Positions 4,601-53,400 of a DNA stretch of 64,000 nt are shown piece after piece. Every line of letters starts with the position of its first letter. The stretch's first letter is position 1. The stretch is from Haliotis rufescens (Eukaryota), in the NCBI RefSeq assembly GCF_023055435.1, contig NW_025963857.1:26536001-26600000 (forward strand). Reading direction: 5' to 3'. The position numbers and the translations under genes are program-made. The notes under the pieces are model-generated. The model worked only from the letters and a program-made list of their open reading frames with translations. It did not search any database and was not told the origin of the DNA.

Positions 4601-7600
4601 CGACACATCCGAGGTCAAACGGAGTTTGACGGTATATTCTATGTTTAGCGGATGACGAGGGCCCAGCCAATTAAACCCAATGCTGGCCTGGCTGCCCTGG
4701 TATAAGTTCATACTCCCGACAGCAAGGACGATGTTCTTGCATAATCCGTATCACATATTGAAGACCAAAATGAAATATTTAAAAGTGTATTTAGTTGAAA
4801 TATCACGTATTGTGGTATACATTGTTGCTTATATTTCCTTGAAAGAACGTGGGATGATGTCTCTACACAACATTCCACTACTGTCACTTCCAAAGCAATG
4901 AATCAATAATTCAATTTTTGGATACAAAACGTATTTCTTTTATGCTAAACAATATGGGTGTTTTTCAGAAATATCTCGGCAGGTTGAAGACAAAAAGAAT
5001 GTTCTCAATATATTCAGCAACAAGACAGCCAAGCCTTTCATCATCGGCTTCGATCACCATCGAGAAATGGCGGACTGGGGTGACGCTATAAGAAGCAATG
5101 TTGCGGCACTAGAAAACAGAGTACGTTCATTATTATTATCACCATTTTATATTATGTTGATGGTTTTATTAGACAATGAATTTGATGCTGTACTACAAAG
5201 TTACACCCCTGGCGAGATGTATGACCTCTCAAAATACAGGGTGGGGTGGAGGTGATGGGAGGGTGGGGAGAAGGTGATGAGTAGGTGGGGTGGAGGTGAT
5301 TGATGGATGGGGTTGATGTGATGATGGATGGGGTGGAGGTGATGTGGGGTGATGGGTGGATGGGGTTGAGGTGATGGAAGTTGGGGCGGAGGAGATAGGG
5401 GTGGAGAGGAGGAGATAGGAGGGTTGGGAAGGAGGTGATGGGTGGATGGGGAGGACGTAATGATGGCTGGGTGGGTAGAGGTGATGGGAGGATGGAGATG
5501 AGGTGATGGGTTGTTGGTGGGAAGGTGATGGGTGGATGGTGAGGAGGTGACGGGTGGGTGGTGAGGAGGTGATTATTGGTGGGTGGGGAGGTGGTGATGG
5601 GTGGATGGTGATGAGGTGATGGGTGGGAGGGGAGGAGATGATGGGTGGGTGGGGAAGAGGTGATGGGTGGGTGGGGAGGAGGTGATGGGTGGTTGGTGAT
5701 GTGGTGATGTCTGGGCGGGGAGGAGATGATGGCTGGGTGGGGAGGAGATGATGGCTGGGTGGTGATGAGGTGATGGGTGGGTGGTGATGAGGTGATGGGT
5801 GGGTGGGGAGGGGATGATGGCTGGGTGCTGATGAGGTGATGGGTGGGTGGGGAGGTGGTGATGGCTGGGTGGGGAGGAGATGATGGGTGGATGGTGAGGA
5901 GGTGATGGGTGAGTGTTGGTTGAGGAGGTGATGGGATGGTCGGAGGAGGTGATGATTAGTGGGTGGGGAAGAGGTGATGGGTGGGTGGTGAGGAGATGAT
6001 GGGTTGGTGGTGAGGAGGTGATGGGTGGGAGGGGAGGAGGTGATTGCTGGGTGGTGATGAGGTGGTGATGAGGTGATGGCTGGGTGGGGAGGAGATGATG
6101 GGTGGGTGGGGAGGAGGTGATGGCTGGGTGGGGAGGAGGTGATGGGAGGGTGGGGAGGAGGTGGTGGCTGGGTGGGGAGGAGATGATGGCTGGGTGGGGA
6201 GGAGGTGATGGCTGGGTGGGGAGGAGGTGATGGCTGTGTGGGGAGGAGATGATGGCTTGGTGGGGAGGAGATGATGGCTGGGTGGGGAGGAGGTGATGGG
6301 TGGGAGGGGAGGAGGTGATTGCTGGGTGGTGATGAGGTGGTGATGAGGTGATGGCTGGGTGGGGAGGAGATGATGGCTGGGTGGGGAGGAGGTGATGGCT
6401 GGGTGGGGAGGAGGTGATGGGAGGGTGGGGAGGAGGTGGTGGCTGGGTGGGGAGGAGATGATGGCTGGGTGGGGAGGAGGTGAAGGGTGGTTGAGGAGGA
6501 GGTGATGGCTGTGTGGGGAGGAGATGATGGCTTGGTGGGGAGGAGATGATGGCTGGGTGGGGAGGAGATGATGGCTGGGTGGGGAGGAGATGATGACTGG
6601 GTGGTGATGAGGTGATGGGTGGGTGGGGAGGAGGTGAAGGGTGGGTGGGGAGGAGATGATGGCTGTGTGGTGATGAGGTGATGGGTGGTTGGTGATGTGG
6701 TGATGTCTGGGCGGGGAGGAGATGATGGCTGGGTGGGGAGGAGATGATGGCTGGGTGGTGATGAGGTGATGGGTGGGTGGGGAGGAGGTGAATGGAGGGT
6801 GGGGAGGAGATGATGGGTGGGTGGGGAGGAGGTGATGGCTGGGTGGGGAGGAGGTGATGGGAGGGTGGGGAGGAGGTGGTGGCTGGGTGGGGAGGAGATG
6901 ATGCCTGGGTGGGGAGGAGGTGAAGGGTGGTTGAGGAGGAGGTGATGGCTGTGTGGGGAGGAGATGATGGCTGGGTGGGGAGGAGATGATGGCTGGGTGG
7001 GGAGGAGATGATGGCTGGGTGGGGAGGAGATGATGACTGGGTGGTGATGAGGTGATGGGTGGGTGGGGAGGAGGTGAAGGGTGGGTGGGGAGGAGATGAT
7101 GACTGGGTGGGGAGGAGATGATGACTGGGTGGTGATGAGGTGATTGGTTGGTGGGGAGGAGGTGAAGGGTGGGTGGGGAGGAGATGATGGCTGTGTGGTG
7201 ATGAGGTGATGGGTGGTTGGTGATGTGGTGATGTCTGGGCGGGGAGGAGATGATGGCTGGGTGGGGAGGAGATGATGGCTGGGTGGTGATGAGGTGATGG
7301 GTGGGTGGGGAGGTGAAGGGTGGATGGGGAGGAGGTGAATGGAGGGTGGGGAGGAGGTGATGGGAAAGTTGGAGGAGGTGATTGGGAGATGCTGATGCTG
7401 AGGGTGATCATGAGTGACAGTAAATGTATCAATTTATTTTGAATATTAATTATCATGCTACATATTTGGATACAGCTTACAATAATGTATTTTTACTAAA
7501 TAATTCGAACTGATTTGCGGTGCACGCCTCCAAGATTTCATACAGGGGTAACATGACGGGGGGTCCGTGAGTGTGTCTGTCTGCCGTAGGACCTGGCTTA

Positions 7601-26630: not shown

Positions 26631-26838
26631 NNNNNNNNNNNNNNNNNNNNNNNNNNNNNNNNNNNNNNNNNNNNNNNNNNNNNNNNNNNNNNNNNNNNNN
26701 NNNNNNNNNNNNNNNNNNNNNNNNNNNNNNNNNNNNNNNNNNNNNNNNNNNNNNNNNNNNNNNNNNNNNNNNNNNNNNNNNNNNNNNNNNNNNNNNNNNN
26801 NNNNNNNNNNNNNNNNNNNNNNNNNNNNNNNNNNNNNN
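26631..26838. other. Assembly gap (N run)
   Basis: Ns in the sequence. Confidence 1.

Positions 26839-27364: not shown

Positions 27365-27371
<7 letters not shown>

Positions 27372-27435
<64 letters not shown>
27372..27435. repeat. (TA)n microsatellite, left flank of the Crypton
   Basis: Direct reading. Confidence 0.95.
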
Positions 27436-27437
<2 letters not shown>

Positions 27438-28379
27438 ATTAACCACTGTGTTCGGTTGTTACCGAAAAATCTACACACGAGTGATTAATCTGCCACGATT
27501 AGAACGAGGCTTTATCCTTTTTCTCCCATAACAATACGCCATAAAATGTCGAGCTCGTAGTTGATGATTTCCTGTGTTTCCTGTGTTTCCCCCGAGCCTC
27601 GTTTTCAAATATGCCCAGTAATACAACTGCACCGAAAACAAGTAAATAGGCTCTAGCGACGACAACCCACAGGAGTCTTCCCGTGACAGGCAAGGCACTT
27701 GTTCGCATTCATGTTACGGGCTTTGTTAACTATTAAAAAATGATAGGAGTAACGTTTTGAGAATTATTAATGTGAGTTGATATCTATAAAAGGTTTTGGA
27801 TTACCCGGCCAATAACTATTTGTATTCATCTCGTCGCGACTATCAGTCTCAATGCGCAACACTAAATAGGTCCACCTTTGAGTGTATGTAAACAAGTCAT
27901 ACGTTTATTTGTCCGCTGGAAACTAATGTTATAAACCCAAATAAGAGGAAATGAATTTGTTTTTTTTGTTGTAAAATATTGATAACGAAAAACAAGGGCT
28001 CAAGGAACTGTCAGCAGGATTGATCAGACTAGATTCTATAAATACCAACTCAGGCAACTGATCAGCTGATTACTGCCAGGTGAATCTTCTCAACTCAAAG
28101 AAAGAATTGAAATATTTGTAAACGAATTTTGCTCTTTAAACTAATTTTACAGTGAATAATTCAATATTTGACTTTTGAACATACTATTTACCATCATAAC
28201 ACCAAACATGTTACTAAATGAGTTGTCTAATTTTCACACATTTGAGAATGACAAGAAACAATGAATTTGACAAGCACAATAGTTTATTGTGTGTGAAACA
28301 TAAAGACATAGGATATATGTAAACAATAAAATATCATTTCAACAGTAATCAAATATTTACAACATTTAATACCTTGTCT

Positions 28380-31300
28380 TTAATACTGTTGATTCTGAAA
28401 ATAATTAACTGTGATGTTGTATGTGCCCCCATATATATTGTTAAACATTCCCTGCACGGGATCTACACCCCTGGAGACATAGACTGTGTGGCTCTCCCTC
28501 TGCTCAGAACTTGTTCTGGACATCTGGCTGGACACCATGGTGCTCACAGGATCTGGTATGGGGCTCACAGGACCTTGTGTGCTTTTGGGTCTTTTTGTTT
28601 GTCCACCAATAATCTTAGATATAGTTCTATGCTGGTTGCTGTTCAGTGAACTGTAGTCATTTAGACTTTGCACATTCTTGTGGCCAGATATCTGCAATCA
28701 ATAAGCTTAATAAATAATACATATTTATGAGATATGGGGTATGTCAATTTCATTCCTAAAATTTAGTTATAAGTATTGTCTTTGTATCATGTTGACATAA
28801 AGAAGTTGCACAGATCTTTACAAGTTTTCAAACATGAAATTTGATTATTTAACTTTGAATATTCATCGATTTAGCATTTAGTGAAGCTCCTAACCTGCAT
28901 CACTTGGTTGCTAGGAACACCAGCATCACACAACTTTTGGACAACATATTTTCGTGCACTATGGTTGGTCAACCTTTTGGCTTGTGGTCCTCCATCTGTC
29001 AATCCTGAATCATAATGGTTTATTGGAAAACTTTATTACATTTGTTATATTAAATCTGCATGTAGTAATTAAATCAAGTTATCATCACTGTAGTGTAAAC
29101 ATTATCATGTATTGATATGAACAATTTACATTTTCTCTTATGATATTGATATTTAGATCATATAGATGGAAAACATAAATTACCTGCTGCTTTCGCCATA
29201 GATTTCATGAAGGAACCCAACTTGTTGATCCCTACTGGCTGTCCCCTGAACCACTTCTTGGACTTATTCATGTCTGTACACGTTGATATATAAAAGGGAT
29301 CAGTTTCCTTCATGTAGTGTGTTGGCCTCAATTCTGTATACTTTTTGAACATCCTTACAGGACAACGTTCTGGGTTCTCCTTAGTAGCCCACATCTTTGG
29401 CTCAACTTGTCTGTAAGACAAACACATGATAGATAGAAATAGTGAAAGTATCTTTCACATCATTGATGATCTATTTTACTGATTAATTAAAAAATTATTT
29501 GTGTAAGGTCATTCATTATAATTCATAAGAGTTACATTTCTTTCATCCATAAAACATACCAGAAGATGATTTCAAATTACATTAAAATCAATTTTATTGA
29601 AGTATATTTTAAACAATTGAATATTTTCGTTTTGTTGCGCATTAAGTTGTATTTATATAATATTCATACTCACAAATCATCACCAATTTATTTTCCTTAC
29701 CTGATATTATTTGGATCTGCTCCACCTCTTGTTTTTGTTGATCGCTCACAGAAGGCAACATAATCATCGCTATTACCATCCTGCTTCACTTTCAAATCGC
29801 CCAACTTCATATCATGGTGCTCCTGCACTCCTCTCATACCAAAGTATATGGTATTGTTAAACCATACAGTGTGCAGGAGCGCCTCTGGTGTGTGTGATCC
29901 CAGTTGACCTGAGGGACAGAGGGAGACTTTATATCAGTAAAGAGAACACCGGCCAATTATACATTACATACAGACCTTTTATAACATACATGTGAAGAGC
30001 ACCACTTCGCTCATTTTAGCTGTTTTCATATGTTTTTTCATAGCTAAAGAATTTATTGTCACAGGATAGTTGGATGTTAAGAGCTGAATAAATTTATCAT
30101 AACATGGATTTACCTGATGAGTCGACTTCATCCTCTGTGAGGCAATCCGCTTTACGAGGTCTGTTTCCTCTCCCACTTCTTTTCAGTTCCACTTGCTTGG
30201 AAGCAATGACCATATTAAGCTGGGCGAACTCCTCGCTCCTAATGAGACAGTAGGCATAATTGTGTTCCCTCAGATGTCGGTTGAATGATGATAACATTCC
30301 TGTAAGTAAAATGTCTTTAAGAACTTGAAGATAAGCATGCTTCATACTTTTAGTAATAAGCAGACTGGTCTAAATAATAATTTGATATTAAGTGTATTAT
30401 CCTAATGTAGAATAAACCAAAATTAAAATCATCATAACAATATATTTAAATTTAGATTTGTATAATTACTTTGAAATTTAAGACGTTCAAATATTATGTG
30501 TCATCTATTAAACAAACTGTAATCAGATTGTTCCTAATTTTGGAATATATGCTATACATTGCTATCAGAATGACAGTTAGTTAAAGATGTGGATGTTTAC
30601 CAAAATATTAAACTTCAATTTCTTTATCATGTTTGTTAACATCTGTAAATGTAATAGTGAAAACTTGCCAATCTGAGGCCCATGTTTTTATAATATTGGA
30701 TATTACTTTAATAATGTTTCTAAAGTGCGTAATTTTACCTTTAAGGGATGATGGTTCATAGTTTTCACCGTTACTTTTCCTGGCATCCATAAAAAACTTG
30801 CAAAGGTGACTGTTAAGTCTGTGTGGAGGGATGGATTGAAGGGGTCTTGTTTCACCTCTATTTTTCTCTAACCACTTGGCAAGTGTTGTCATGTTTGAAT
30901 TAGTTTTCTTGGCGGTGTTCTTATTTTCTTGTGCCTTGATGAATTGCTGTATTTCCTCCTGGCTACATGACATCCAGTTGTTGAACTCTTCATCAAACTC
31001 ATCATCTGAACCATCTAGTCTAACATCTACAAATAAACAACATGAGATTTAATAACAGTTATTCATTGATTTAGATACTCAACAGCACTGACTTTGAAAG
31101 TAACTATTATTTCTGCAAAATGATGATTATCAAATATGATTAACCTAAATGGATTGAAAATATGTTAATAGTGTATGTATATTGGATTTACTTATGATTT
31201 ATGTGTGTATATTTTATTGTATATATTTATACTTGTGGTAAGTCATGGTTAGGGACTCGGCAAGCCTCGTTCCTATGGCTAAGTTCTCGAACCCAACCAA

Positions 31301-31786
31301 AACAACAAATTTTTCAGAATTTCAAAAAAAAAATTATATCATTATTTTACCTCTGAATGGAGAACTCTCTCTTGATCTTTTCTTTGACCCATTCCTTTCT
31401 TTCTCTCGTGAGTTTCTACCTAAAATAATAATATGAAATTAATTTTTCACTGCTCCCTATTAGAAATCAAAATAGTTAAGAAAAAATATAAATACATATA
31501 TTACTTTTTGAGTTTTCATAGATCAAGGTACTTATAACTGCATTCAAGTTTAAATGTGGTAATGTTAATGTTTTTTTATTAAAAAAATGAGCTTCATAAT
31601 TTTCCAGGAATTGCATGTTTCAATTATTGAAGTCTTCAAGGTAAAAAACCCCCAAATATTTATAGGCCCAAATAGATGAATTATATTGATCTGGATAAAC
31701 TCTACCTGTTGTAAGGGGAGACAACTGCTGTGGTTGCAGTACACCCTGGTCGTGCGCTGTACGGTCCGGCAAAGTATGATCGTTTC
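28380..31786 (-). CDS. Crypton tyrosine recombinase (DUF3504; KIAA1958/KCTD1/ZMYM-related). Exons: 31786-31706, 31419-31351, 31026-30739, 30299-30114, 29908-29701, 29410-29184, 29004-28895, 28691-28380; first exon unresolved
   Basis: Continuous spliced frame: ENKNTAKKT...LCKFFMDARKSNGENYEPSSL...FGMRG..EH...KTRGG...RCPV...PFY...WF..QPVGINKL...TNHSAR...SGHKNVQSLNDY. Confidence 0.9.
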
Positions 31787-32034
31787 CTTCATTAAAATGA
31801 AGTATTGCGTTAGATACAAATTATTTGAGTCTTTATTTTCTTGAAATATGAAGTCTCTATTATTGTCAAATAACTATGAAATATGCTTTGGACGCTGGGT
31901 TACACAAACGATCGATCGGCTCCATATCAACACTTCGTTTATAACGTGACATTGCTTATGTGTTTGATGGTTAATTTTTTTAAATACCAAAAGCAATATG
32001 GTAGTCTATTAGTATTTTTACATAAATTACTTAA

Positions 32035-32268
32035 CTATTTCATTAGCTGTTTTATTAGCATTGAAAACGCCCAGTGAAGAATCTTCCGGAATGGCTCATC
32101 TGGTCCCGTAATATCGAAGCGGTATCTTGCTTCGGTCACCGTCTTCCCATTCTGCGACTTAATCTCGTACATCGGGAAGCCGAAATTCTCAGATACATCT
32201 CCGCATATCACACCCCTTCCTCCTCCACAAATTTTCACTTGATCACCAACTTTCGGTGATTGAAACAT
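32035..32268 (-). CDS. Small ORF or first exon of the Crypton gene (MFQSPKVGDQVKICGGGRGVICGDVSENFGFPMYEIKSQNGKTV...), SH3/KOW-barrel-like pattern
   Basis: GC-richer coding-like island just downstream of two CCAAT boxes (~32372, ~32414). Confidence 0.4.
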   Translation of the reverse strand: MFQSPKVGDQVKICGGGRGVICGDVSENFGFPMYEIKSQNGKTVTEARYRFDITGPDEPFRKILHWAFSMLIKQLMK

Positions 32269-32556
32269 CGTCACTACGGTGGGGCCTAATGTTTTGACAG
32301 CTGAGTATTTCCTGCACCAGACGACCTCGGGAATCCCCGATTCGAAAATAGTGCCGGAATTTATTTTTAGACAGCCAATCAAAACACGCTGACACAGCAC
32401 TCCACTATCAGCCAGCCAATCAGATTGCGTAAATAAAAATAAACCACTACGAATAAACCACTGCTGGCGATTGGAGATCAAGCCCTGTTATGGGAGAAAT
32501 ATATATAAATATATATATATATAATGAATACATACACGCACATTCTTACATACATT

Positions 32557-33080: not shown

Positions 33081-36000
33081 ATGTCGCCGATCACGACGTA
33101 CCTCCCCGCTGTGCTGATGGTTATATCTCAGAGTGTGCTGCTGCATGCCCATGAGTCAGTTTCAAACACGAACCCTTGGATTCAGAAGTTTTCTAGCCAA
33201 CCGCAGAACAACTGTGTTCCTCACAAAGGTAAGAACATTCACGTCGTAGTCATAATATTCAAGCATTATCAGACCGGCCTGTATATAACTGAATCTAGCA
33301 AACAAGCACACGAACCTACCAGACGAAACGAGAATGTCTCCGATGAGCTGCCATAATTGTGTTGAAAACTTGTATATGTATTCAGGCCTACGTTTAATGA
33401 CCAATATGGTGTTTTGATTGATAATCAATGTACAAATGATCAGTTTTTAATGTCCAACAGGGGCATAACTGTTAATACTGCGGAAACCCATTATCATATA
33501 TAAGCTTGACGTTGACTGTTGTCTTATTCTTACTCAAACGTACAAACAGGTATATTCTTACTTGAGGTCATATACTTTCATTGAAACGCATAAACTTATA
33601 TACATTCACGTGTACATGTACGTAAACACGATATGCTAACATTTCCTCATATATTCACATAAAATGACATAAACTCACATACTTACGTTGAAATCAGACA
33701 TTTAATAAACACGCAAACACGTACATACATGTAAGCGTATTTAATACAAGTAAATGTTACAAACACGCTTATTCTTACTTAAACGCACATATTCTAATAT
33801 AAACCCACCTGCTTGCATCGAAACGCATATACTTCCTTTTCATAAGGTATTCCTTATAAAGCGTACAAAGACACATATATCTAATTTTTAAGCCCACATG
33901 CCTTACATTAACAATCATTTCCTTAATTAGATTGACTTGTGATCATATAAGACAATTGACTTTTCTTTTGTATGTGTTTGTGACGGGTGCCCCAGATTGA
34001 GCAGGATTCGCTCACCTTTTCGCGAATACCTGGTATCATTACTACTTGATAGTAATTCATAATCAAATGCTCATGATCTATACGGAATCGTACAAATGGA
34101 CACTGCTTTTAGGAGATATTCTTTCATGATTATGGAATTGTTTTTTTTGTTGATTTTACTTACATAAATACGCATGCACGTCATTTTACCGGCGGTGCAA
34201 GCTTACGTAACTTGTCAAGGCGCTTTTCTGTTTCGTTTCCAGAATATGCCACTTGTACTGTTCAGCCAGACCCAGCAGCTCCTTACAAGGTGACTGGCAC
34301 TGTAGACTTCTCTCAGATGGATGTAAGTGACAGTTGTACCTACATGACAGGCACTCTCTCTTTAAAAAACAAATCAAACGACGACTATTCAAGACCAGTT
34401 GTCCTTCTTTTCATGATATGTGTTTGTACGTGACAGGTGTCATGTTGATGTCGTCAGGTAGGTCTGACAAAGGAGAACACCCCTTTTGAAGATTTTTAAA
34501 GATTTCTATTTTCTTCACGTTTACGTATCACGGTATGTACTGATGACTTTTAAAATCGGTACAAATTCACATTTTGAAGTTATATATATTTGGGGCACAG
34601 GTGACCCAGTAAGTTCTCGCAACTTACCTGCCAGAGAATTCCTATGCCTCACGACTGGAAAAGACGTGACCAATGTTGATAAAATGAAACAAGCACGAAA
34701 TAACCACGACTCAACCATATTTCACTTTAAGAAGGTTGTGCACAGATATCAATGAAATAATAAAAATAAAAATAAAAATAAAAATAAAAACTTTGATTAG
34801 CTTTTTCAATGTATATTTGCCATTTAACAAATTTGATTAAAAACAAATGATTTAATGTGAGGTACATGTATGTATTCCTTATCTGTGATTTATATCCGCA
34901 ATGAGCACAGAAAAAAACATTACTAGTGTAATATATTGTTTTGTACCACAAACGATAATATATATGTAGGTGAGGGAAGATGTCTTCAAACAACAGTCCA
35001 GCTATATCCCGTCGATCTACGCTGGTCAGTCTGAACCGAACTGAATTTGAATTAAACTACAATGCATAGCATATTGAGGGTGACACATTCACACAATTAC
35101 GGTATACATACAAATATTTTAAAGTTCATAATGTGCAGAGCCCACTTAAGTCAATCAATAATAGTTCAACAGAAGTTTGAACATTTCTTGAAAGGTATCT
35201 CATTGTATATACAGATTTTTTTTATATATACGCGACCATAGTAAAATGATCGTTACAAAAATATATAAATAAAAAATCGGTGGGTGGGTAGATGGATGGA
35301 TGGATGGAAGATAGACAGATGTTTGGGCGCTTATATACTAAATCGTCTTTTACTTCATGGTACAGATGCAGATGTTTCGTTTTTGTGTTACAGTTCTGCG
35401 GCCACTATGGTGACCTATTAATCAAGGTCACCCTGAAGGGTTTCCCGACCTCTGACCCAGTGAAAGAGCATGGCATGCACGTACATCAATACGGTGACCT
35501 GTCTAACGGATGCACCAGCACAGGAGGCCATTACAATCCGTTCAACATGACCCACGGGGCTCCCTTTGATGAGAAAAGGTTTTATCTTAAACATCACTTG
35601 TATTTTTAACATGCATTTTTAAGTTATCATTGTAATTAATGTTGCTGTCTGCAATGTTACATGGCGGTCTGTACGAACATTAATTATTGAAATGGAGCAG
35701 TCATAGCAGTGGCTAATAGCATGAGTAACAACCAGCCAATCTCCATGCTCGTCTCAAGACACATATGGTGTCTCCTTAGGCAAGTGACATTGTTCGAAAT
35801 GTGCCTCTGTGTACAAGCAGTGAATGGCTACCCGGTGGGGTGAGATGGCGATGTGACTGTTAACGTTTTAAAACCTCACAAGTAGCTTAGGGGGTATATT
35901 CCCCAGGGAGCTGAGAATTAAAACCGAGTGCACATTTTGGGGGTAATAATGTAGCATTTTTAGCACGCTTTGTGCATTAGAGATATACACAGTATTATTA

Positions 36001-38527
36001 TTATCATTATGGAGACTTGCTCTGTCAATGTTTACATATAAAATGAGTGATTGCGTTGTATGTAACGCAGATTTGAACAACGTTTTTAAAGCGTGTCAGT
36101 TAAATGCGAGGACTTATAAATTCAACCTGAGGGAGGAAATCCTTGAGCAAGGGTTACGAGACATTAGGATCATAATAGGAGAAGAATCAGGAATTCGAAC
36201 CGACGACTAATGGATCCTGACTTTGCACCTATAAACTCCAAGTAATTAATAGGCGTTTGTACATCCAGAAGTGATAGGGGAATGATCTGAGATTTCATTA
36301 CAAAACTGTAGTTGTAACCACAAGGCTGATTTTTAACAGTTGTGATTTGTTGTGCTTGCAGACACGTGGGTGACTTTGGGAACATTCCTGTTCAAGCTGG
36401 TCAAGTAAAACAGTATCGTCGTGAGTGGATGGCTGATATTTATGGCCGTTACTCTATATTGGGAAGAGCAATCGTGGTGAGTTCAATTGACCCCATTCCT
36501 ACCAGCCTGCGCATACTGTTTTAAAAGAAAATGAAATGATCGGATTTCCCTAAACTGTATCCGCAGATCGCAACACTATAATAATATACTGCTGGAAGAA
36601 AGTAAAGCACTCACAGAATCTTTCAATGACTAATACAACTAGTGTTGGAATGAAACTACTGACAAATGAGTTCGGGTAAACGAATGCATCTCTAACAATA
36701 AGAAACAACCGTTGTCAGCTGAGGTTATATTTTGATCAGGATATTCTAGCACAACCACCAGTGTAGTTTCATCCCCCAAATAATATCTCTTTAAGGTATG
36801 GAGAATTCATTCGATGATTTCAGGTTTTGTTGATGCAAATATCACTTTGGGTCCATCGTTGACACCCGTTCTTCAAAGGTTCAGTAGTAAGTAAACCCTA
36901 CACTGACCTCCATCCAGCGCCTCTCCCACTAGTCGGGCGTGCAGAAGGGGCAACTCCTTTCAATTCACGCAGATTCTGTACATGAGGTTCCAGTGCCTGT
37001 AAACTACACCCAAGGTATCCCAAATGTGCTCTAGCGGATTCCGAATTGGACTCATTGCGGGCCAAGGCAGAGTCGGCACAGCGTTCTTCTGAAGGTAGGC
37101 TGTCGTGGTCACTACCCTGAAACGATGAGGTCTGGCGTTGTCACCCTTCAACTGAAGTCTTGAGGCTATAGGGTGATTGTTGAAATAGGGAACAACAACT
37201 GGTTTCCGGATATTTCGGTTGAACTGATGTGGTGATGTTGTCTTGAGTGATCCATCTTGCAATCGTAAGAGATACACCCCCAGTCAGTACCGAGTCTGCT
37301 CAATGAGGGATAGCTGGCCTAATGTTCATGGATTTTTAGGCCATATTTCTGTGCCTCCAAATCCTCAGTCGTGCATCAACGGCACGGAACAGGATCATGC
37401 TTTCGTCCGACAAATTGACTTTTCGCCAGGTTTTCAGGTTCCTAGTCTGTTGTGTTCAAGATGATCCCAAACAACACCTCTGGTGATCTACCAGTAGAGG
37501 GTGTTTGATGACGCTCTTGGACGTCAATCTTGCTGCTCTCAAGTGGCTCCTTGTAGAATATGGCTACTTGCAAATGGCTGTCGTCGAACTAATCAAAGCA
37601 CTGTCCTGGATTCATGTTGGGAAGAAGGGCGTTCTGACTGTGAAAGAACAGCGTGCCTTCTCACCATTCATTACTGTTTAATGTTGGCCCAGTTGACGCC
37701 AGATAGCTTTGAAGGACAACTCTGTTGGATGCACTCCGATTATTTGCCGTCTTTGTGCCTCTCACATCTTCCGTCATGCCATGTATATGAAGGAATAAAA
37801 TATTGTGCGACAGCAGATTTAAATGCCCAAACTTGATGCCTGAATTTGGTGGAATGCATGACTGGACTCCATCAATGTTACTATCTTCCTTCCCATTACA
37901 ATTGAAATTACTTGGGCGCATCTTATAATTCACTTTTTTAGTTGTATATTATTAATAACGCCAAGAAGAGTTTGGAGATATTTGTCACGGAAATAATCAG
38001 CATTAAAGGATCCATTAGTTACTGTTTGGCCCATGTCATACATCATATTTAAGATTTATAATGTGGAAACACTGAAATTCTTCGTCGCATGGAACTTACT
38101 TGATATGGTATAATTCACTGGTCAGAAACGTTTGTTTCCTAAACTTTCAAGTTTAACCAACCTTTTCAAACAAAAAGTAGTTCTTGATGGTGATTGAATA
38201 TTAAGCCAAACTATAAAGACCACATCCATGCTACATAAGCTAAAGTATTCAAATTGAATGTAAAATCACCATCACTGTCATTGCAATCAGGGGTCACTCC
38301 ACACATGGAGACTTTGTTATTTGCAAGAATGGAATGATAATCAACCAGTGAATACACTTAAACACATATTACTTTGGTTTTTCTTGTTGTGGCAGATTCA
38401 CGCCGGAACGGATGACCTTGGAAAAGGCGGAAACCCGTCCAGCAAGGTAAACGGAAATGCTGGAGCCAGACTGGCCTGTTGTGTCATCGGACGTGGAGAG
38501 GAGTGGTACGCAGCAGACCAACAGTAA
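33081..38527 (+). CDS. SOD3: Secreted (extracellular-type) Cu/Zn superoxide dismutase copy 1, 219 aa. Exons 33081-33228, 34243-34322, 35394-35578, 36362-36476, 38396-38527
   Basis: Signal-like N-terminus; [55 protein letters not shown]. Confidence 0.93.
35765..36010 (+). mobile_element. Old SINE remnant (CORE/Deu-like body, L2-like tail)
   Basis: CTTAGGCAAGTGAC, AATGGCTACCCGG and TCCCCAGGGAGCTGAG motifs; (ATT)n tail. Confidence 0.5.
36586..37947 (-). mobile_element. Decayed Tc1/mariner transposon in intron 4 of SOD copy 1
   Basis: GDNARPH...[16 protein letters not shown]; frameshifts and deletions; absent from the 90-bp homologous intron of copy 2. Confidence 0.85.
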
Positions 38528-42300: not shown

Positions 42301-45153
42301 GAGGCCATGGTACGATTCCGATATCATGAGCATGTAAATTAATGAATCACTAGCAAATCGTATCCTTCCCCACCGATGGCATTTTTCGAAAACACATGCA
42401 ATAGCAGTTTACCTGAATAAGAACACAGGAAAATAGGGAATTGCATCGGCCATCGTATATTGTACTTGAGGCATCCATTTTGGAAATGTCCTCCACATGT
42501 TTTCAATAAAAAAATATATAGTTATATGATTATGGAAAAGATTTTGTCGCTTTTTTTCTTCAATGCGCAGATATGTGTTACGTTTGTTTTTACAGTACTG
42601 CGGTGCCTATAGTTACCTATTGGTCTCGGTCTCTCTGGAGGGTTTCCCACTCTCTGACCCCTTGACAAAGCATGGTTACCACGTGCATCAATACGGTGAC
42701 CTGTCTGACGGATGCACCAGCACAGGAGGCCATTACAATCCTTTCAACATGACCCACGGGGCTCCCTTTGATCAAATAAGGTTTTAATTTTAACATCACT
42801 TTTATGTTTAACATGTATTTCAAGTAAGTGTTTAATTTGTTATTGAAGTTTTCGAGGGCACTGGAGGCACGGCGGACACGAGTGACTAGGCAGGCCCCTT
42901 TCAACAAAGTAATCTGAGCGTAACTCCCACGATTGAACGTTGGCTTTGTTGAACTAGGCCCTGGTCGTCGATGGCCGCTTCCCGAAGCGGCTAGTCTTTG
43001 ACGCTGATAATTGTAGACTACGTCACCTGGATAACTGTTATGTCGTATGAAGACTATTTTTTTCAGCTATAGTTGCAAAAGCAGATATTTTGTGAATTAT
43101 ATCCATAAGCCTAAATATATTTTCAGAAAACACCTTGCAACAAACTGATATTTTTTATGACAATTACCTCATTCTGAAGCAAAAGTATGTTTTTCAAGAT
43201 TTTTCCGGGACAATTAATATCTTTTGATAAAATCCAAGAATTTCCCAGAATATCAAATGGATGGTCCCTAAGACATTTTGACACAATAATAAGAGGATGA
43301 CATTATTTGCCTCCGCTTCTTGCAAGAAACGTTAGGTACGCTGCAGAATATTGAAGAAATAATGAGAACGAATTTAACGTTCATTGTTTTAAAGAGTACC
43401 GTAGCCGTCATTTTTAACAATGAGAATATATTATATATTCTCTTACGATGTTTGGATCACAGAGAGCGATTTACAACCGCGTTGATGCCTCATCATCATC
43501 ATTAATTCCTCAGCACCATACCATCGCCCTTTGAGACTACAAAAGTTGTGAACTACATCACTTCGGGCTTCCATCCCATATTTAGCAGATACAGTTTGCT
43601 ACGCATATAACTGAACTACTGTTCGGAGCCGCTAAAAACTCACTTTAACCCTATTTAAATACCCACAAGCATGAGACAATATGTCTTATTACTATAAAAC
43701 CATCTTAATCGCCAAAGGTAAGCTATTTAATAGATACAGGAACCAATCAGGTGCCGATGCATATACCATTTGCATTAAACGCGATTATTACAGCGGTCAG
43801 CGTCTGCCTGAAGAGAGCATCAGCTGTAAGTTCCCCTGTCTCTGTCATACAAAACGACGTTGGTTGGTTGGTTTGTTGTTTAACGCCGCACTCAGCAATA
43901 TTCCAGCTATATGACGGCGGTCTGTAAATAATCGAGTCTGGACCAGACAATCCAGTGATTGATATCATGAGCATCGATCCACGCAATTGGGATCAATGAC
44001 ATGCATCAACCAAGTCAGCGAGCCTGACCACCCGATCCCGTTAGTCGCCTTTTACGACAAGCATAGTTACCTTTTACGGCAAGCATGGGTTGCTGAAGAC
44101 CTATTCTACCCCTGACCTACAAAACGACGTATTAAGGGGACAATATAAGGACAGGTCGGCTCGGATTCAGTCTACTGGGTCTGAGGTAGGGCATCCATGT
44201 TAAACTGCAGCATGGCAACCAGGTGGATGAGCACTATAAAACTAGAATTAACAGCCACCCACACACGTGCATGTACATCGCAAAGTAAAAGTATCTTGAA
44301 CGGGACGTTAAATCCCATTTACCTCACTGCACCTCACTTAAATGGTCCAGACCCGATTTTTCACAGATCTAGAACCCATGAAATAGCTGGAATATTGCGT
44401 AAACAACAAACTTAAAAAGGTATTACTTTGGTGGCAGACATGCTCGGTGCATGTTTCCATATTAAATCATTGATTGAGTAGGATGTAACGCAGCATTAAA
44501 CAGTTATTAAACATTAAACAAGAAATTATTAAATCAACATGACCCGGGTTGTAGGTGTTTATTAACGTTGTGGACATATACGAGCATATTAAACCTCAAT
44601 GGTCGTGATCGAGAAGAATCTGGAATTCAATCCGAAAACAAACGGATCCTGAATGTTCTAAGGGATGCAACAACGGATTGAGGACCCATAAATCATTAGG
44701 TGTCCTGGGCCTCCAAGAGTGATAAGGAAATAACCTGACATTAAATACTTGACAAAGCTATAATTGATATAACCATAAGGCTTATTTGAAACTGTATTGC
44801 TCTGTTATGCTTGCAGACACGTTGGCGACTTTGGGAACATTCCGGCTCATGATGGTATCGTCAAACACTATCACCGTGACCGGGTTGCAAGCATTTTCGG
44901 CCGTTACTCCATATTAGGAAGAGCAATCGTGGTGAGTTCAACAGTTTCCATTCCGATCGCCTACTGTTTTACAATAAAACACAACGAACACATGTTACTT
45001 TGGCTTTTCTTGGTGTGGCAGATTCACGCAGGAACGGATGACCTTGGGAGAGGCGGGAAGCCGTCCAGCAAGGAAAACGGAAATGCTGGAGCCAGACTGG
45101 CCTGTTGTATCATCGGCTATGGAGAGGAGTGGTACGCAGCGGACCAACAGTAA
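39378..45153 (+). CDS. SOD3: Secreted Cu/Zn superoxide dismutase copy 2, 216 aa. Exons 39378-39516, 41922-42001, 42596-42780, 44817-44931, 45022-45153
   Basis: Paralogous to copy 1 exon by exon; [33 protein letters not shown]. Confidence 0.93.
39873..40144 (-). mobile_element. tRNA-derived SINE family C (V-domain-like TTTCCTCCCACA)
   Basis: 13-bp TSD TGCTGACCGATAG; (CACT)n tail. Confidence 0.88.
40815..41237. repeat. 39-bp tandem repeat, about 11 copies
   Basis: CATAAACTCACATTACTTTGTACATAAAGATTGTTATGTTCA recurs. Confidence 0.9.
43861..44118 (-). mobile_element. Family-A retroposon copy
   Basis: 12-bp TSD ACAAAACGACGT. Confidence 0.88.
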
Positions 45154-50423: not shown

Positions 50424-53400
50424 TTACTTTCCCCACACCACCGTGCGCGGTGGGTTCTGCCCCCGACCAATGACACAGCATCCTACTCTTGGTCCTGAAT
50501 TGCCGCTAGCCACACTTCCGGCGTTACCACCAAGGCCAAGGTCATCAGTTCCTGCATGGATCTACAAATGATAATGAAATTTCAGTTTAAGTCCTCAGAA
50601 TTGAATCATATTTTAGAAGTACCCCTCTTTGATTTGAGCCGGGGATAGAGTGGGGCCTCCTGATAGTATAGGTTTCCGACATGTTTCAAGGGTCAGAATC
50701 AAAGAGCGGCCGACTATAGTGGATATACTAGTCAGGTGTTATACTGCATCCATATACTCGATAGCACATTTATGTCGATTCTCTAAATTTCTCATACATG
50801 TGGCCAGGGCATTCTCCAAGCCCCTCTATTTCTTCTTGTGGGACTACCATCTTTCAGGTGTGTCTAAGTTCAGTTGTCAAAACATCTATTTGATTGAATA
50901 TGTTCGGATGGGAGCCTTCGACGTGATTTTTTGTACGTGGAATCCACACACTGCGACTAATTAAGGTTACCCTCCAAAAATTCGGCATGTGCTCCGTAAA
51001 GTGGACAATGACAAACCCTCAAAACAACATTAAAGGCCAAAGTAGACACAATTTATGGATAAGAGCTTCTTTATTTACTGTAAAGGCGACGTTTCGGTAT
51101 TGATCCTTTTATCGTCGACAACGAAATAAGGGTCTATACGTCGCCTATACAGTAAATAAAGAAGTTGTTGTCCATAGATTGTGTCTACTTTGTTAACCGT
51201 CAACTTCTGAGTAATGCCTATCAAACAACATTAAATGCATATTAAGTATTTGACCCAAGCTGAAGATAAACAAAACTCATCAGTTGGGGCACCCAAACTT
51301 TCATTTTCTCTTGAAGCCAGAAAAAAACGGCCTTTTTCATACATTTTAGCTTATGCTTATGCTTAAGCTATGCTTACAACATAGCTGATACTTTTATTTC
51401 AATATTTTAAAGTAATTTTTGAGCTTGCTTTTTGCAGTGGGCGGGAAGAGTACCACCCAACCGCCTCCTTTGACAGTCGTTTTCGATGTAACAGAACAAA
51501 GCCATAAACATACATTCCCAACCGTGCGGTTAAGTAAGTTTCAATACAGAATGACTAAATATTCCGTTTATTAGTAAACGCGCCAAAAGCTTTTACCATT
51601 GTACGCGATTAACTGCAGAGCACGAATCCGATGACAATGGTAAACCTGCTCAAGCCAACTGTCAGATAGGACAGGACCATCCACAAATGTTCAGTGACTT
51701 GATCGCCACGTGTATTGTATGTCTAAAGATGTATCAAGAGCTCTTCAATCCCATGGCCAGTCGGGTGTATACATTGTACTCTCAGAACCTTCCAACTGCA
51801 CACATCATCAATATTTCATCACAAGTTTCAAAGACAGGCCAAACGGTCAAAGGTCCGTGGCTTGATACTTTGGTTAAAAACATCTACACGGCTATATGTA
51901 GTCATTGATGTATTGAAACCTGTAAAGTCTTGACTATGTCGGCGAACACATGTACACTACCAACCAATGGCTACTCCGACGGAGACTGCGAAGTACATAC
52001 CAGAAAGTTTATAAGCCGAAAATATGTAGTTTGGTACACTGTAAGATAATAGACTAGACGCCGCACGCATTAAAAGGTCTTTCTTCACCATAAATGTTGC
52101 ATTTGGCAGATTATATTATATGTCTTATTTTTCCTGATAAAAATTTCTCACTTTTACGTACAATGAAACAAAATTCTTGGCGAGTGAGTGAGTTGGGTTT
52201 TACGTACCAGAAATTACATGTCAGCTCACACATTGTTGTTTGTCTGTTTGTTTGTCTTTTGTTTAGCGACGCACTCAGCAATATTCCAACTATATCACCA
52301 CGGTCTTCAAATACTCGAGTCCGGACCAGACAATCCATCATTAGCATCGATCCACGCAATAGGTATACGATAACACGCATCAACCAAGTCAGCGAGTCTG
52401 ACCACCCGATCCCGTTAGTCGCCTCTTACGACAAGCATAATCGCCCTTTGTGGCAAGCATGGGTTGGTTAAGACCTATTCTACCCCGGATCTTCACGGGT
52501 CCAGCTCACACGTATATTGAAGGGAAACCCAAAGGGACCACTTCGTAGATGTGTTCCACCTTTATGAAGCGTACGACGACTTGGTTCGAACCCAAGATCA
52601 AGGGATCCTGGTAAAAGAAACAATGAAACTACACAGTGAATTTTAGAGTCCTAGACGAATATGGTGGTCTCAGACTAAGAATCATTATCTTGGAATCGAG
52701 CTGTATTCGTACTGTACGTCTGTGTAGTAACATTATACATGTATAATAAGACACGCATACCACAAGGCTCCTGCCGATGAGTGAGTTCGTCCCGAACAGC
52801 CTCGCTACCGTATCAGTAATGGTTGTATTAACAGTGCCATCAGCTTGTTCCATGATGTTTCCGAAGTCACCAGCATGTCTGAAACAAAACAAAAAAACTA
52901 ACAATAGCACAGAACAGAAGTGGCACACACAAAAGGATAGTGCGTGAAGGAGTGGTTTTACTCTGCATTCAGCAATATTCCAGTAATATCACGGTGAGCA
53001 CCAGAAATGGACTTCACATGTGGGGAATCGAACCCGGGTCTTCACCGTTGCGAGCGAACACTTTAACCACTAGGCACTGGACGCATTGTTTTAGATAAAT
53101 AGTTCTCATTAGTTAAGTTGACCTTCAACTCCGGACGCCCTCAAAGACGGACGCCATCTCACTGTGTCAGTTTAAAATCCTTCATTGATCAACTCATGAT
53201 TTGATTTTACTCAAATCCGTCATGATTCACTCATATGCTTGCGATTAAAACCAGATTACCTTACTGGGGAGGTACGATCGCCATGATTAGTTCCAAACGG
53301 GTTGAAGTGTCCCCCAAGGCTTGCGCAGCCATTACTGAGGTCTCCGAGTGCATGGGCGTGGAAGCCGTGAAGAACCACGGTGTCGGTTGTCGAGAATCCT

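What the first reader, a model, noticed from the sequence alone, without database searches (positions are those of the whole stretch)
27436..32499. Intron-rich, catalytically complete Crypton tyrosine-recombinase element between (TA)n tracts
Seen: at least 8 GT-AG exons splice into one open frame carrying all YR catalytic positions (R in FGMRG, K in KTRGG, HxxR in NHSAR, H in SGHK, Y in NDYS), with a polyA signal near 28283 and CCAAT boxes at the far end. Known: Cryptons are YR DNA transposons, and their domesticated animal relatives (KIAA1958, KCTD1, ZMYM, QRICH1) typically lose catalytic residues. Inference: this is either a potentially active autonomous Crypton with a host-like exon structure or an early domestication intermediate, sitting about 600 bp upstream of a SOD gene. 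One possible lesion: the helix usually reading 'xLWxSGxLG' is shortened to EVDSSGQLG.
Basis: partly seen in the sequence, partly recalled or inferred. Interest (0 to 1): 0.8.

Follow-up and report, generated by a model that had tools for sequence, protein, structure and literature searches.

The report
Damaged copy of a mobile Crypton
This stretch is one slightly broken copy of a young, multi-copy "Crypton" jumping gene that carries a nine-exon tyrosine-recombinase gene; the copy is ordinary, but its family has precisely defined ends, empty target sites and a large terminal hairpin, which makes it a usable system for studying how Cryptons move.

Summary
On the minus strand, nine exons (32268-28380, 1650 nt) encode a 549-aa DUF3504/Crypton-type tyrosine recombinase with R, K, HxxR, H and Y all present. 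Seven of the eight introns appear spliced out in transcript-like contigs of a sister copy.

It is a transposon, not a host gene. At least eight other loci carry 91-97% identical copies with unrelated flanks. About 30 internally deleted non-autonomous copies share both ends. Two insertions have paralogous empty sites that show exact ends (ATAGAGGATTAACC...TTATGGGAGAA) and no target duplication.

This particular copy has four private lesions:
- intron-1 donor GT>AT
- a 2-nt deletion in the left terminus
- loss of one arm of a terminal palindrome

A sister copy on contig C268 is intact. Domestication is not supported.

The unexpected part is the terminal structure. Intact copies carry a ~150-nt terminal palindrome followed by an inverted copy of the opposite terminus. 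At least four other Crypton families in this genome also have a 3' palindrome. The accessible literature reports no terminal repeats for animal Cryptons.

The scan had already noted a Crypton terminal hairpin (s1-816494) and these ends (s1-810515) elsewhere in this genome.

The parts
27365..27432 (.). Left flanking (TA)n tract, the target microsatellite
   Evidence: Sequence. Homology to sister copies stops inside it at about 27425-27433.
27433..32499 (-). Whole Crypton copy, about 5.07 kb, with the gene on the minus strand
   Evidence: Homology with copies on C268, C36/C479, C223, C90, C603, C594 and C2 ends at these points, and the flanks beyond are unrelated. The ends are fixed by paralogous empty sites of two sister insertions.
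27433..27513 (.). Left terminus and outer arm of the terminal palindrome. The window reads ATAGGATTAACC..., which is 2 nt shorter than the family's ATAGAGGATTAACC. The inner arm is missing after 27513.
   Evidence: Alignment of 13 left ends. This arm is 92-98% conserved even in the ~80% family. The intact hairpin in L002 has dG -89 kcal/mol and z -21.
27520..27533 (.). Internal inverted copy of the right terminus (TTTCTCCCATAACA)
   Evidence: 14 nt, 100% complementary to 32486-32499 (I24). Present after the palindrome in sister copies.
27534..28379 (-). 3' non-coding part of the element, with AATAAA at 28288-28283
   Evidence: Shared with the non-autonomous copies at 79-87%. Its ORFs give no Pfam hit.
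28380..28691 (-). Exon 9: SGHK, catalytic Tyr (NDYS), C-terminal tail, stop
   Evidence: Splice joint 28691|28895 seen in an X8 contig.
28895..29004 (-). Exon 8: HxxR (NHSAR)
   Evidence: The 179-nt skip is seen in X8.
29184..29410 (-). Exon 7: second half of DUF3504
   Evidence: Pfam 3.1e-13. Joint 29410|29701.
29701..29908 (-). Exon 6: first Arg (FGMRG) and Lys (KTRGG)
   Evidence: Pfam DUF3504 7.1e-11. Invariant columns. Joint to exon 5 seen in X8.
30114..30299 (-). Exon 5, with a private 9-nt in-frame deletion between 30120 and 30121 (Arg-Leu-Tyr missing)
   Evidence: All five sister copies with this exon carry the 9 nt, and so do contigs of X1, X3, X7 and X8.
30739..31026 (-). Exon 4: N-terminal QRICH1-like / core-binding-type domain
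   Evidence: Pfam PF25561 2.1e-5, below cutoff. 866 library proteins match at E<=1e-3, none above 53% identity. Joint 31026|31351. Intron 4 (30738-30300) was not seen spliced.
31351..31419 (-). Exon 3: basic, NLS-like linker
   Evidence: Joints 31026|31351 and 31419|31706.
31706..31786 (-). Exon 2
   Evidence: Joints 31419|31706 and 31786|32100 in an X8 contig. Conserved in sister copies.
32100..32268 (-). Exon 1: start codon and a 56-aa SH3-like beta-barrel domain. The donor just downstream (32099-32098) reads AT instead of GT.
   Evidence: Six of six long copies and 18 of 20 fetched loci L041-L060 have GT. AlphaFold2 pLDDT 87.6 with five strands. Best Foldseek matches are KOW/SH3-like barrels, TM about 0.75, E 6e-3. 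The same domain is present in intronless paralogs.
32369..32463 (.). Right subterminal region: two CCAAT motifs (32369-32381, 32410-32422) and a tandem AATAAACCACT motif (32438-32463)
   Evidence: This is the best-conserved part of the right end in the ~80% family (0.86-0.89). The related TAACCACTG also lies in the left terminus.
32486..32499 (.). Right terminus ...TGTTATGGGAGAA(A)
   Evidence: Invariant in 24 right ends, followed by unrelated flanks.
32500..32527 (.). Right flanking AT-rich tract, a continuation of the target microsatellite
   Evidence: The flank begins ATATATATAAAT, which fits the target preference seen.

Best explanation
The stretch is one copy of a young, multi-copy CryptonA-type DNA transposon that landed in a (TA)n microsatellite.

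Gene. The element carries a single nine-exon gene. Its product has an N-terminal SH3-like barrel, a QRICH1-like N-domain, a DUF3504/tyrosine-recombinase catalytic domain with the full R-K-HxxR-H-Y set, and a short C-terminal tail.

Movement. The family moves as DNA without making a target-site duplication. The most likely route (inferred) is excision to a circle whose joined ends form the recombination site, followed by recombinase-mediated crossover into A-rich targets. The targets have A at -2 and T at +8.

Cis elements. Those shown by conservation are the ~80-nt left-terminal arm of a ~150-nt palindrome, an inverted copy of the right terminus just inside it, and the right ~120 nt.

This copy. 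It has four lesions not shared by its sisters: an intron-1 donor GT>AT, a 3-aa deletion, a 2-nt terminal deletion and a lost palindrome arm. It is therefore most likely a decaying copy that is no longer autonomous. At least one sister copy (C268) looks intact, and about 30 internally deleted copies depend on such a source.
For: Gene model and domains.

Splicing: X8 contigs join 7 of the 8 exon pairs at the predicted sites.

Copies: 144 DNA matches in the genome. Near-full copies at 91-97% lie on 8 other loci with unrelated flanks.

Non-autonomous copies: they lack 28420-31408. There is also a 1.25-kb derivative that is 98.7% identical (L060).

Empty sites: in both cases the empty paralogs equal the two flanks with nothing duplicated. 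One is ACATTAAA^ATAAATATAA (L066-68), the other TAATTTAT^ACATAAATAA (L062-64).

Target preference: A at -2 in 13 of 13 left flanks read by hand. T at +8 in 19 of 24 right flanks.

Selection: pN/pS is 0.18, 0.17 and 0.42 against three sisters, while intron divergence is 1.7-3.1%.

Private lesions.

Terminal palindrome. The same layout occurs in an unrelated intronless Crypton family. 3' palindromes occur in further families.

No other coding capacity.
Against: No circle junction or excision footprint was seen (contigs only). The runs are only guessed to be RNA, and three of the four also hold intron-containing contigs, so splicing rests on one run. Intron 4 was not seen spliced. Whether the AT donor, the RLY deletion or the terminal changes actually abolish function is inferred, not tested. 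A downstream Met or a cryptic donor could still give a recombinase. The two palindrome arms do not co-vary more within copies than between copies. The evidence for function is therefore sequence conservation, not proven pairing.
Confidence: 0.8

Rival explanations
1. The window copy is itself a functional autonomous Crypton. On this view its deviations from the sister copies are tolerated polymorphisms.
For: All nine exons are open, and all catalytic residues are present. The exons of this copy differ from intact sisters mainly at synonymous sites. A palindrome lacking the inner arm is also found in another copy, L049.
Against: The intron-1 donor is AT here and GT in 6 of 6 long copies and 18 of 20 fetched loci L041-L060. 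Read-through ends in a stop after 77 aa. The RLY deletion removes residues that align with a conserved helix in every paralog. The left terminus lacks 2 nt of an otherwise near-invariant end.
Confidence: 0.1
2. It is a host gene, or an early domestication intermediate, derived from a Crypton and kept by host-level selection.
For: The gene structure is host-like, with 8 introns. pN/pS is well below 1. Annotation pipelines name relatives 'KIAA1958 homolog' or 'QRICH1-like'. An earlier scan note (s1-807619, unchecked) reports domesticated Crypton genes elsewhere in this genome.
Against: The gene is multi-copy with unrelated flanks and exact shared termini. Empty paralogous sites exist. Deletion derivatives keep both ends. 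The catalytic set is intact, whereas all described domesticated DUF3504 genes lost the Tyr and the second Arg (PMC3212892). This copy carries disabling private lesions.
Confidence: 0.03
3. The recombinase gene is a passenger. On this view the element is moved by a different machinery that recognises the terminal hairpin and the 14-nt inverted repeat, for example a foldback-type or HUH-type system acting in trans.
For: The element has a long terminal palindrome, a 14-nt inverted repeat and insertion without a target duplication. These are not the textbook Crypton hallmarks (PMC3212892, PMC8969392).
Against: At least four further Crypton families with different end sequences each have their own 3' palindrome next to their own recombinase gene, so the hairpin travels with the recombinase. 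There is no other ORF or domain in the element. The coding sequence is under purifying selection between copies.
Confidence: 0.07

Closest known systems
CryptonA elements of animals (Kojima & Jurka 2011, PMC3212892); Crypton-A insertions polymorphic in oysters (bioRxiv 10.64898/2026.02.10.705023)
   Same: A single gene encodes a tyrosine recombinase that matches DUF3504 and has the full catalytic set. There is no reverse transcriptase and no target-site duplication. Copy number of the autonomous form is low, and internally deleted non-autonomous derivatives are more numerous. The host is a mollusc.
   Different: That paper found no terminal repeats of any kind in animal Cryptons. Here there is a ~150-nt terminal palindrome plus an inverted copy of the opposite terminus. 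Eight introns were confirmed or predicted, although close paralogs in the same genome are intronless. There is an N-terminal SH3-like barrel. No short terminal direct repeat of 4 or more nt was found.
DIRS1-type tyrosine-recombinase retrotransposons (inverted terminal repeats plus internal complementary region)
   Same: An internal segment is complementary to the two element termini placed side by side, that is, to the junction of a circular form. The recombinase is related.
   Different: There is no reverse transcriptase, RNase H or methyltransferase. The complementary segment abuts the terminus and forms a hairpin rather than lying deep inside the element. The right-terminal repeat is only 13-14 nt.
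Tn916 / CTnDOT-type conjugative transposon integrases (from established knowledge, not tested here)
   Same: These are tyrosine recombinases that excise to a circle. They insert without a target duplication into A/T-rich sites, with base preferences at a fixed spacing of several bp around the crossover.
   Different: They are bacterial and much larger elements. Coupling-sequence carry-over was not demonstrated here. This is a working analogy only, with no homology claimed beyond the recombinase fold.
Domesticated DUF3504 genes (KIAA1958, QRICH1, ZMYM2-4, KCTD1)
   Same: They share the DUF3504 domain and the QRICH1-like N-domain. A profile of paralogs hits the solved QRICH1 structure 9hjt at 2.6e-18. 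NCBI names mollusc relatives after these genes.
   Different: Those genes are single-copy and syntenic, and they have lost the catalytic Tyr and the second Arg. This gene keeps all catalytic residues and is mobile.

Membership tests
Crypton (tyrosine-recombinase DNA transposon) | Encodes a tyrosine recombinase with the R-H-R-Y tetrad | tested here: met
   FGMRG, NHSAR and NDYS, plus Lys in KTRGG and His in SGHK, align to invariant columns of paralogs. Those paralogs pass Pfam Phage_integrase and DUF3504 cutoffs. The residues also align to integrase 3nkh.
Crypton (tyrosine-recombinase DNA transposon) | No reverse transcriptase or other transposition protein; the recombinase is the only gene | tested here: met
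   The other ORFs of 65 aa or more inside the element give no Pfam hit. The exons account for the only coding signal.
Crypton (tyrosine-recombinase DNA transposon) | Mobile: dispersed copies with identical ends and unrelated flanks; empty sites | tested here: met
   Paralogous empty sites were found for two insertions.
Crypton (tyrosine-recombinase DNA transposon) | No target-site duplication | tested here: met
   Each empty site equals the left flank plus the right flank, with nothing duplicated. The dinucleotide AT next to AGAGG is element-borne, seen in 11 of 13 copies whatever the right flank.
Crypton (tyrosine-recombinase DNA transposon) | Short (4-6 bp) direct repeat at both termini (fungal Cryptons; PMC3212892, PMC8969392) | tested here: not met
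   The first and last 10 nt of the element share no 4-mer. PMC3212892 also found none in animal Cryptons, so this does not exclude CryptonA membership.
Crypton (tyrosine-recombinase DNA transposon) | Transposition through an excised circular intermediate | not testable with these tools
   Only assembled contigs were available and no end-to-end joint was listed. Testing this needs raw long reads or inverse PCR.
CryptonA subgroup | Phylogenetic placement with animal Cryptons / DUF3504 clade | tested here: inconclusive
DUF3504 and QRICH1-domain matches and mollusc relatives fit.
Domesticated DUF3504 host gene | Single-copy, syntenic, catalytic residues lost | tested here: not met
   The gene is multi-copy and all catalytic residues are present.
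DIRS-like retrotransposon | Reverse transcriptase/RNase H next to the recombinase | tested here: not met
   No such domain is found in the 5.07-kb element.

The most novel reading that the evidence does not exclude
The ~150-nt terminal palindrome and the adjacent inverted copy of the opposite terminus may be the Crypton attachment site. In the excised circle the two would merge into one ~90-nt-arm palindrome. The crossover point would then sit at the only asymmetric spot, ATAG opposite TT. The recombinase might recognise a folded hairpin or cruciform substrate, as integron attC sites and the CTX-phage attP do, rather than a simple duplex core site. That would be the first defined cis-site architecture for eukaryotic Cryptons. 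It would be shared by several families in this genome, including one whose two 99.3%-identical copies differ by an inverted hairpin loop.
Probability: 0.2. Interest if true: 0.8.

Novelty: new variant of a known kind. Interest (0 to 1): 0.55.

Why it matters
Cryptons are the least understood class of eukaryotic DNA transposons. In the literature accessible here I found no experimental demonstration of Crypton transposition, and animal Cryptons are described as having no recognisable terminal structures.

This family offers the following:
- exact ends
- verified empty sites
- a position-specific target preference
- an apparently intact source copy
- evidence of splicing
- many non-autonomous passengers
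- a conserved terminal hairpin that recurs in at least five Crypton families of the same genome

Together these turn "how do Cryptons recognise their ends and targets" into a directly testable question. For genome annotation, it also shows that gene models named "KIAA1958/QRICH1-like" in molluscs can be live transposon genes. The window copy on its own is of little consequence.

Tried and rejected
1. All searches were done exon by exon or with natural intronless paralogs.
3. The 1.84-billion-protein search with exon 4 found 866 relatives, none above 53% identity. No independently annotated protein of this family was therefore recovered. Named relatives are only 'KIAA1958 homolog' and 'QRICH1-like'.
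4. Foldseek on the N-terminal barrel gave only generic KOW/SH3-like matches above E 1e-3, so no specific function is claimed.
5. A target-site duplication was looked for and rejected. The AT duplication reading fits only 4 of 12 copies.
6. A TAAAT target motif at variable spacing (5 of 24 flanks) was dropped in favour of the fixed-position signals.
7. Co-variation of the two palindrome arms within copies was tested and not found.
8. The ~700-nt extra segment of the short copies was checked for coding capacity. It has none, and it contains a degenerate copy of the right end. Its origin is left open.
10. No circle junction appears among the listed joints.
Full report
WHAT IS THERE

The window is animal DNA of about 40% GC. 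An earlier unchecked scan note, s1-807619, calls the genome red abalone. The genome G000 is 1.33 Gb.

On the minus strand between two TA-rich tracts lies a nine-exon gene:
- E1 32268-32100
- E2 31786-31706
- E3 31419-31351
- E4 31026-30739
- E5 30299-30114
- E6 29908-29701
- E7 29410-29184
- E8 29004-28895
- E9 28691-28380

I translated every exon separately and checked splice phases by exon length only. The nine lengths sum to 1650 nt, which is 549 codons plus a stop.

All acceptors are AG behind a pyrimidine tract. Seven donors are GT. The donor of intron 1 reads AT in this copy.

PROTEIN

Pfam finds DUF3504 in E6 (7.1e-11) and E7 (3.1e-13). The QRICH1 N-domain is found in E4 at 2.1e-5, below the cutoff for an isolated exon.

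The genome holds many intronless relatives with single ORFs of about 520 aa. The window's nine exon peptides tile colinearly on these ORFs from N- to C-terminus. Those full-length paralogs pass the Pfam cutoffs for both DUF3504 and Phage_integrase.

A profile of the paralogs hits the solved QRICH1 structure 9hjt at 2.6e-18. More weakly, it hits integrase 3nkh, aligning HxxR, GH and the catalytic Tyr.

The window protein has Arg (FGMRG), Lys (KTRGG), His-x-x-Arg (NHSAR), His (SGHK) and Tyr (NDYS) in those invariant columns. By contrast, all described domesticated DUF3504 genes lost the Tyr and the second Arg (PMC3212892).

Exon 1 encodes a 56-aa domain that the intronless paralogs also have. 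AlphaFold2 predicts a five-stranded small barrel with pLDDT 87.6. Foldseek's best matches are KOW/SH3-like barrels with TM about 0.75, but E is only 6e-3. Only the fold class is claimed.

SPLICING

Runs were coded, and their kind is only guessed to be RNA. In run X8 (organism D) one 1053-nt contig joins 28691|28895, 29004|29184, 29410|29701 and 29908|30114. Two of these four joints are listed with offsets of 2-7 nt (29002|29182, the same 179-nt skip, and 29912|30121). A second contig joins 31026|31351, 31419|31706 and 31786|32100.

Seven of the eight predicted introns are therefore removed exactly as predicted, in a sister copy about 97% identical to the window. Intron 4 was not seen spliced. 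Runs X1, X3 and X7 hold intron-containing contigs, which could be DNA or unspliced RNA.

IT IS A TRANSPOSON

The 5064-nt stretch has 144 DNA matches in its own genome. Near-full copies at 91-97% identity lie on:
- C268
- C36 and C479 (the same locus assembled twice)
- C223
- C90 (split by a ~6.8-kb insertion)
- C603
- C594
- C2

Homology stops at the same two points in all of them, and the flanks beyond are unrelated.

About 30 copies of 2.4-3.3 kb, roughly 80% identical to the window, keep 27425-28377 and 31444-32499. In them, 28419 is joined directly to 31409, so exons 3-9 are deleted. They also carry about 700 nt of extra non-coding sequence. Among themselves they are 84-96% identical, and half have stops or frameshifts in exon 1.

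A 1.25-kb derivative on C279 is 98.7% identical to the window. Other deletion joints appear in the runs.

EMPTY SITES AND TARGET

Two insertions sit inside other repeats, so paralogous empty sites could be read.
- The C268 copy reads ACATTTAA[ATAGAGG...GGGAGAA]ATAAATATAA. The empty paralogs read ACATTAAA^ATAAATATAA.
- The C279 copy reads TAATTTAT[ATAGAGG...GGGAGAA]ACATAAGTAA. The empty paralogs read TAATTTAT^ACATAAATAA.

The element therefore runs from ATAGAGGATTAACC to TTATGGGAGAA, and nothing is duplicated.

Across copies, the base two positions left of the insertion point is A in 13 of 13 flanks (read). The eighth base to the right is T in 19 of 24, with an A-rich stretch between. The window AT content is 0.60. 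The window copy's (TA)n surroundings fit this preference.

SELECTION AND AGE

Against three sister copies the exons differ mostly at synonymous sites. pN/pS is 0.18, 0.17 and 0.42, while introns differ by 1.7-3.1%. This means most divergence arose in lineages that still needed a working protein, as expected for several active source copies.

THIS COPY IS DAMAGED

Compared with all sisters, the window copy alone has the first two lesions and a third terminal one; the fourth is shared with one other copy.
- (a) A instead of G at the first base of intron 1 (32099). GT is found in 6 of 6 long copies and 18 of 20 fetched loci L041-L060. Read-through would stop after 77 aa.
- (b) A 9-nt deletion between 30120 and 30121 that removes Arg-Leu-Tyr from the helix, which reads EVDRLYSSGQLG in the family.
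- (c) A left terminus 2 nt shorter than the consensus.
- (d) No inner palindrome arm after 27513. One other copy, L049, shares this loss.

The C268 copy has all nine exons open, the GT donor, RLY and the full palindrome. C36/C479 has an in-frame 6-nt deletion in exon 1 and a truncated left part. C223, C90, C603 and C594 have frameshifts or insertions.

TERMINAL ARCHITECTURE

In intact copies the left end, which is the 3' side of the gene, has this order:
- ATAG
- a 75-nt arm beginning AGGATTAACC
- a short loop
- the inverted arm
- TTTCTCCCATAACA, the exact complement of the right terminus TGTTATGGGAGAAA (I24)

The hairpin of the C268 copy folds at -89 kcal/mol, against -20 for shuffles (z -21).

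Read on the other strand, this internal stretch is a near copy of the junction that would form if the two ends were joined. It reads GGGAGAA-AA-AGGATT, against GGGAGAA-ATAG-AGGATT for the joined ends.

The outer arm is 92-98% conserved even in the ~80% family. The right 120 nt is also the best-conserved part of that end. It holds two CCAAT motifs and a tandem AATAAACCACT motif related to the TAACCACTG of the left arm.

The arms do not co-vary within copies. They carry conserved asymmetric CGAG/CTCG positions, and in two copies the variants are swapped between arms.

An unrelated intronless Crypton family has the same layout. Its two copies are 99.3% identical and the element is 2.4 kb. It has a 150-nt palindrome at the 3' side, followed by an inverted copy of its own right terminus. 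The loop is inverted between the two copies.

Three further families also have 120-155-nt palindromes just downstream of the ORF.

The accessible literature says animal Cryptons have no terminal repeats (PMC3212892). It also says the only hallmark is a short terminal direct repeat (PMC8969392). Searches for Crypton hairpins or palindromes found nothing relevant.

The scan itself had already noted a '168-bp terminal hairpin' Crypton on another piece of this genome (s1-816494), and the 14-bp inverted repeat on this stretch (s1-810515).

MECHANISM

Shown:
- mobility as DNA
- exact ends
- no duplication of the target
- a target base preference over about 10 bp
- cis-conservation of both ends
- one recombinase gene under purifying selection
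- trans-dependent deletion derivatives

Inferred:
- Excision to a circle and recombinase crossover between the joined ends and A-rich targets. This follows the model proposed for Cryptons by Goodwin et al. (as cited in PMC3212892). It resembles Tn916/CTnDOT-type integrases, which also insert without duplication into A/T-rich sites (established knowledge, not tested here).
- A role for the palindrome as part of the attachment site, possibly as a folded substrate. This is speculative. Loop inversion in hairpins can also arise by ordinary recombination between arms.

CONTEXT AND VERDICT

The gene's 5' end faces, head to head, a gene with Cu/Zn-SOD motifs that starts about 580 nt away. There is no sign of a functional link.

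The Crypton reading is right at the family level. The 'potentially active' label belongs to a sister copy rather than to this one. Domestication is not supported.

The element is a member of a known class, and Crypton-A is already reported as polymorphic in oysters (bioRxiv 10.64898/2026.02.10.705023). The terminal hairpin architecture, the confirmed eight-intron gene and the defined target make the family a new variant worth following.

Noticed in passing
window 5239-7382: G-rich 22-bp minisatellite (GGGTGGGGAGGAGGTGATGGGT, about 96 copies, 80% matches). It causes the extreme GC skew (0.46-0.71) seen at 4-8 kb. An 83-bp x 3.5 tandem repeat lies at 4305-4597.
   Followed up: partly
window 33081-38524 (+), 42530-45150 (+), 50427-53474 (-): Three sets of exons carry Cu/Zn-superoxide-dismutase motifs (HVHQYGD / HAHALGD, DDLGxG, GNAGAR / GNSGPR). 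This is a small cluster of SOD-like genes. The first begins with a signal-peptide-like exon about 580 nt from the Crypton's right end.
   Followed up: partly
window 26631-26838: A run of 208 N (gap or mask) lies 600 nt left of the element.
   Followed up: no
L041-L059 (e.g. L056:776-1474): The non-autonomous ~80% family carries about 700 nt of non-coding sequence at the position of the stop codon. This segment contains a degenerate copy of the element's right end (...CCAAT...ACCACTGTAAACCTTGTAATGGGAGAA). That suggests an old nested or tandem insertion event in their ancestor.
   Followed up: partly
L069:3284-3433 vs L070:3294-3443: Two 99.3%-identical copies of an intronless Crypton family differ by an inversion of the 12-nt loop of their terminal hairpin (AAGCGAAAGCGA vs TCGCTTTCGCTC). 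This is a flip/flop state.
   Followed up: partly
window 31262-31300 (intron 3): A stretch resembling the centre of the terminal palindrome (..ctcggcaagcctcgttcc..) lies inside intron 3. A similar piece lies in the flank of the C603 copy. Scan note s1-816494 mentions an arm recurring in an intron.
   Followed up: no
G000:C90:32317354-32324132: The C90 copy of the element is split by a ~6.8-kb insertion between exon 5 and exon 6. It is presumably a nested transposon and was not examined.
   Followed up: no
L020:265-288 and 2932-2955: Another intronless Crypton-like ORF (522 aa) is bracketed by a 24-nt inverted repeat pair 2.6 kb apart, instead of showing a 3' palindrome within the fetched 3.2 kb.
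   Followed up: no
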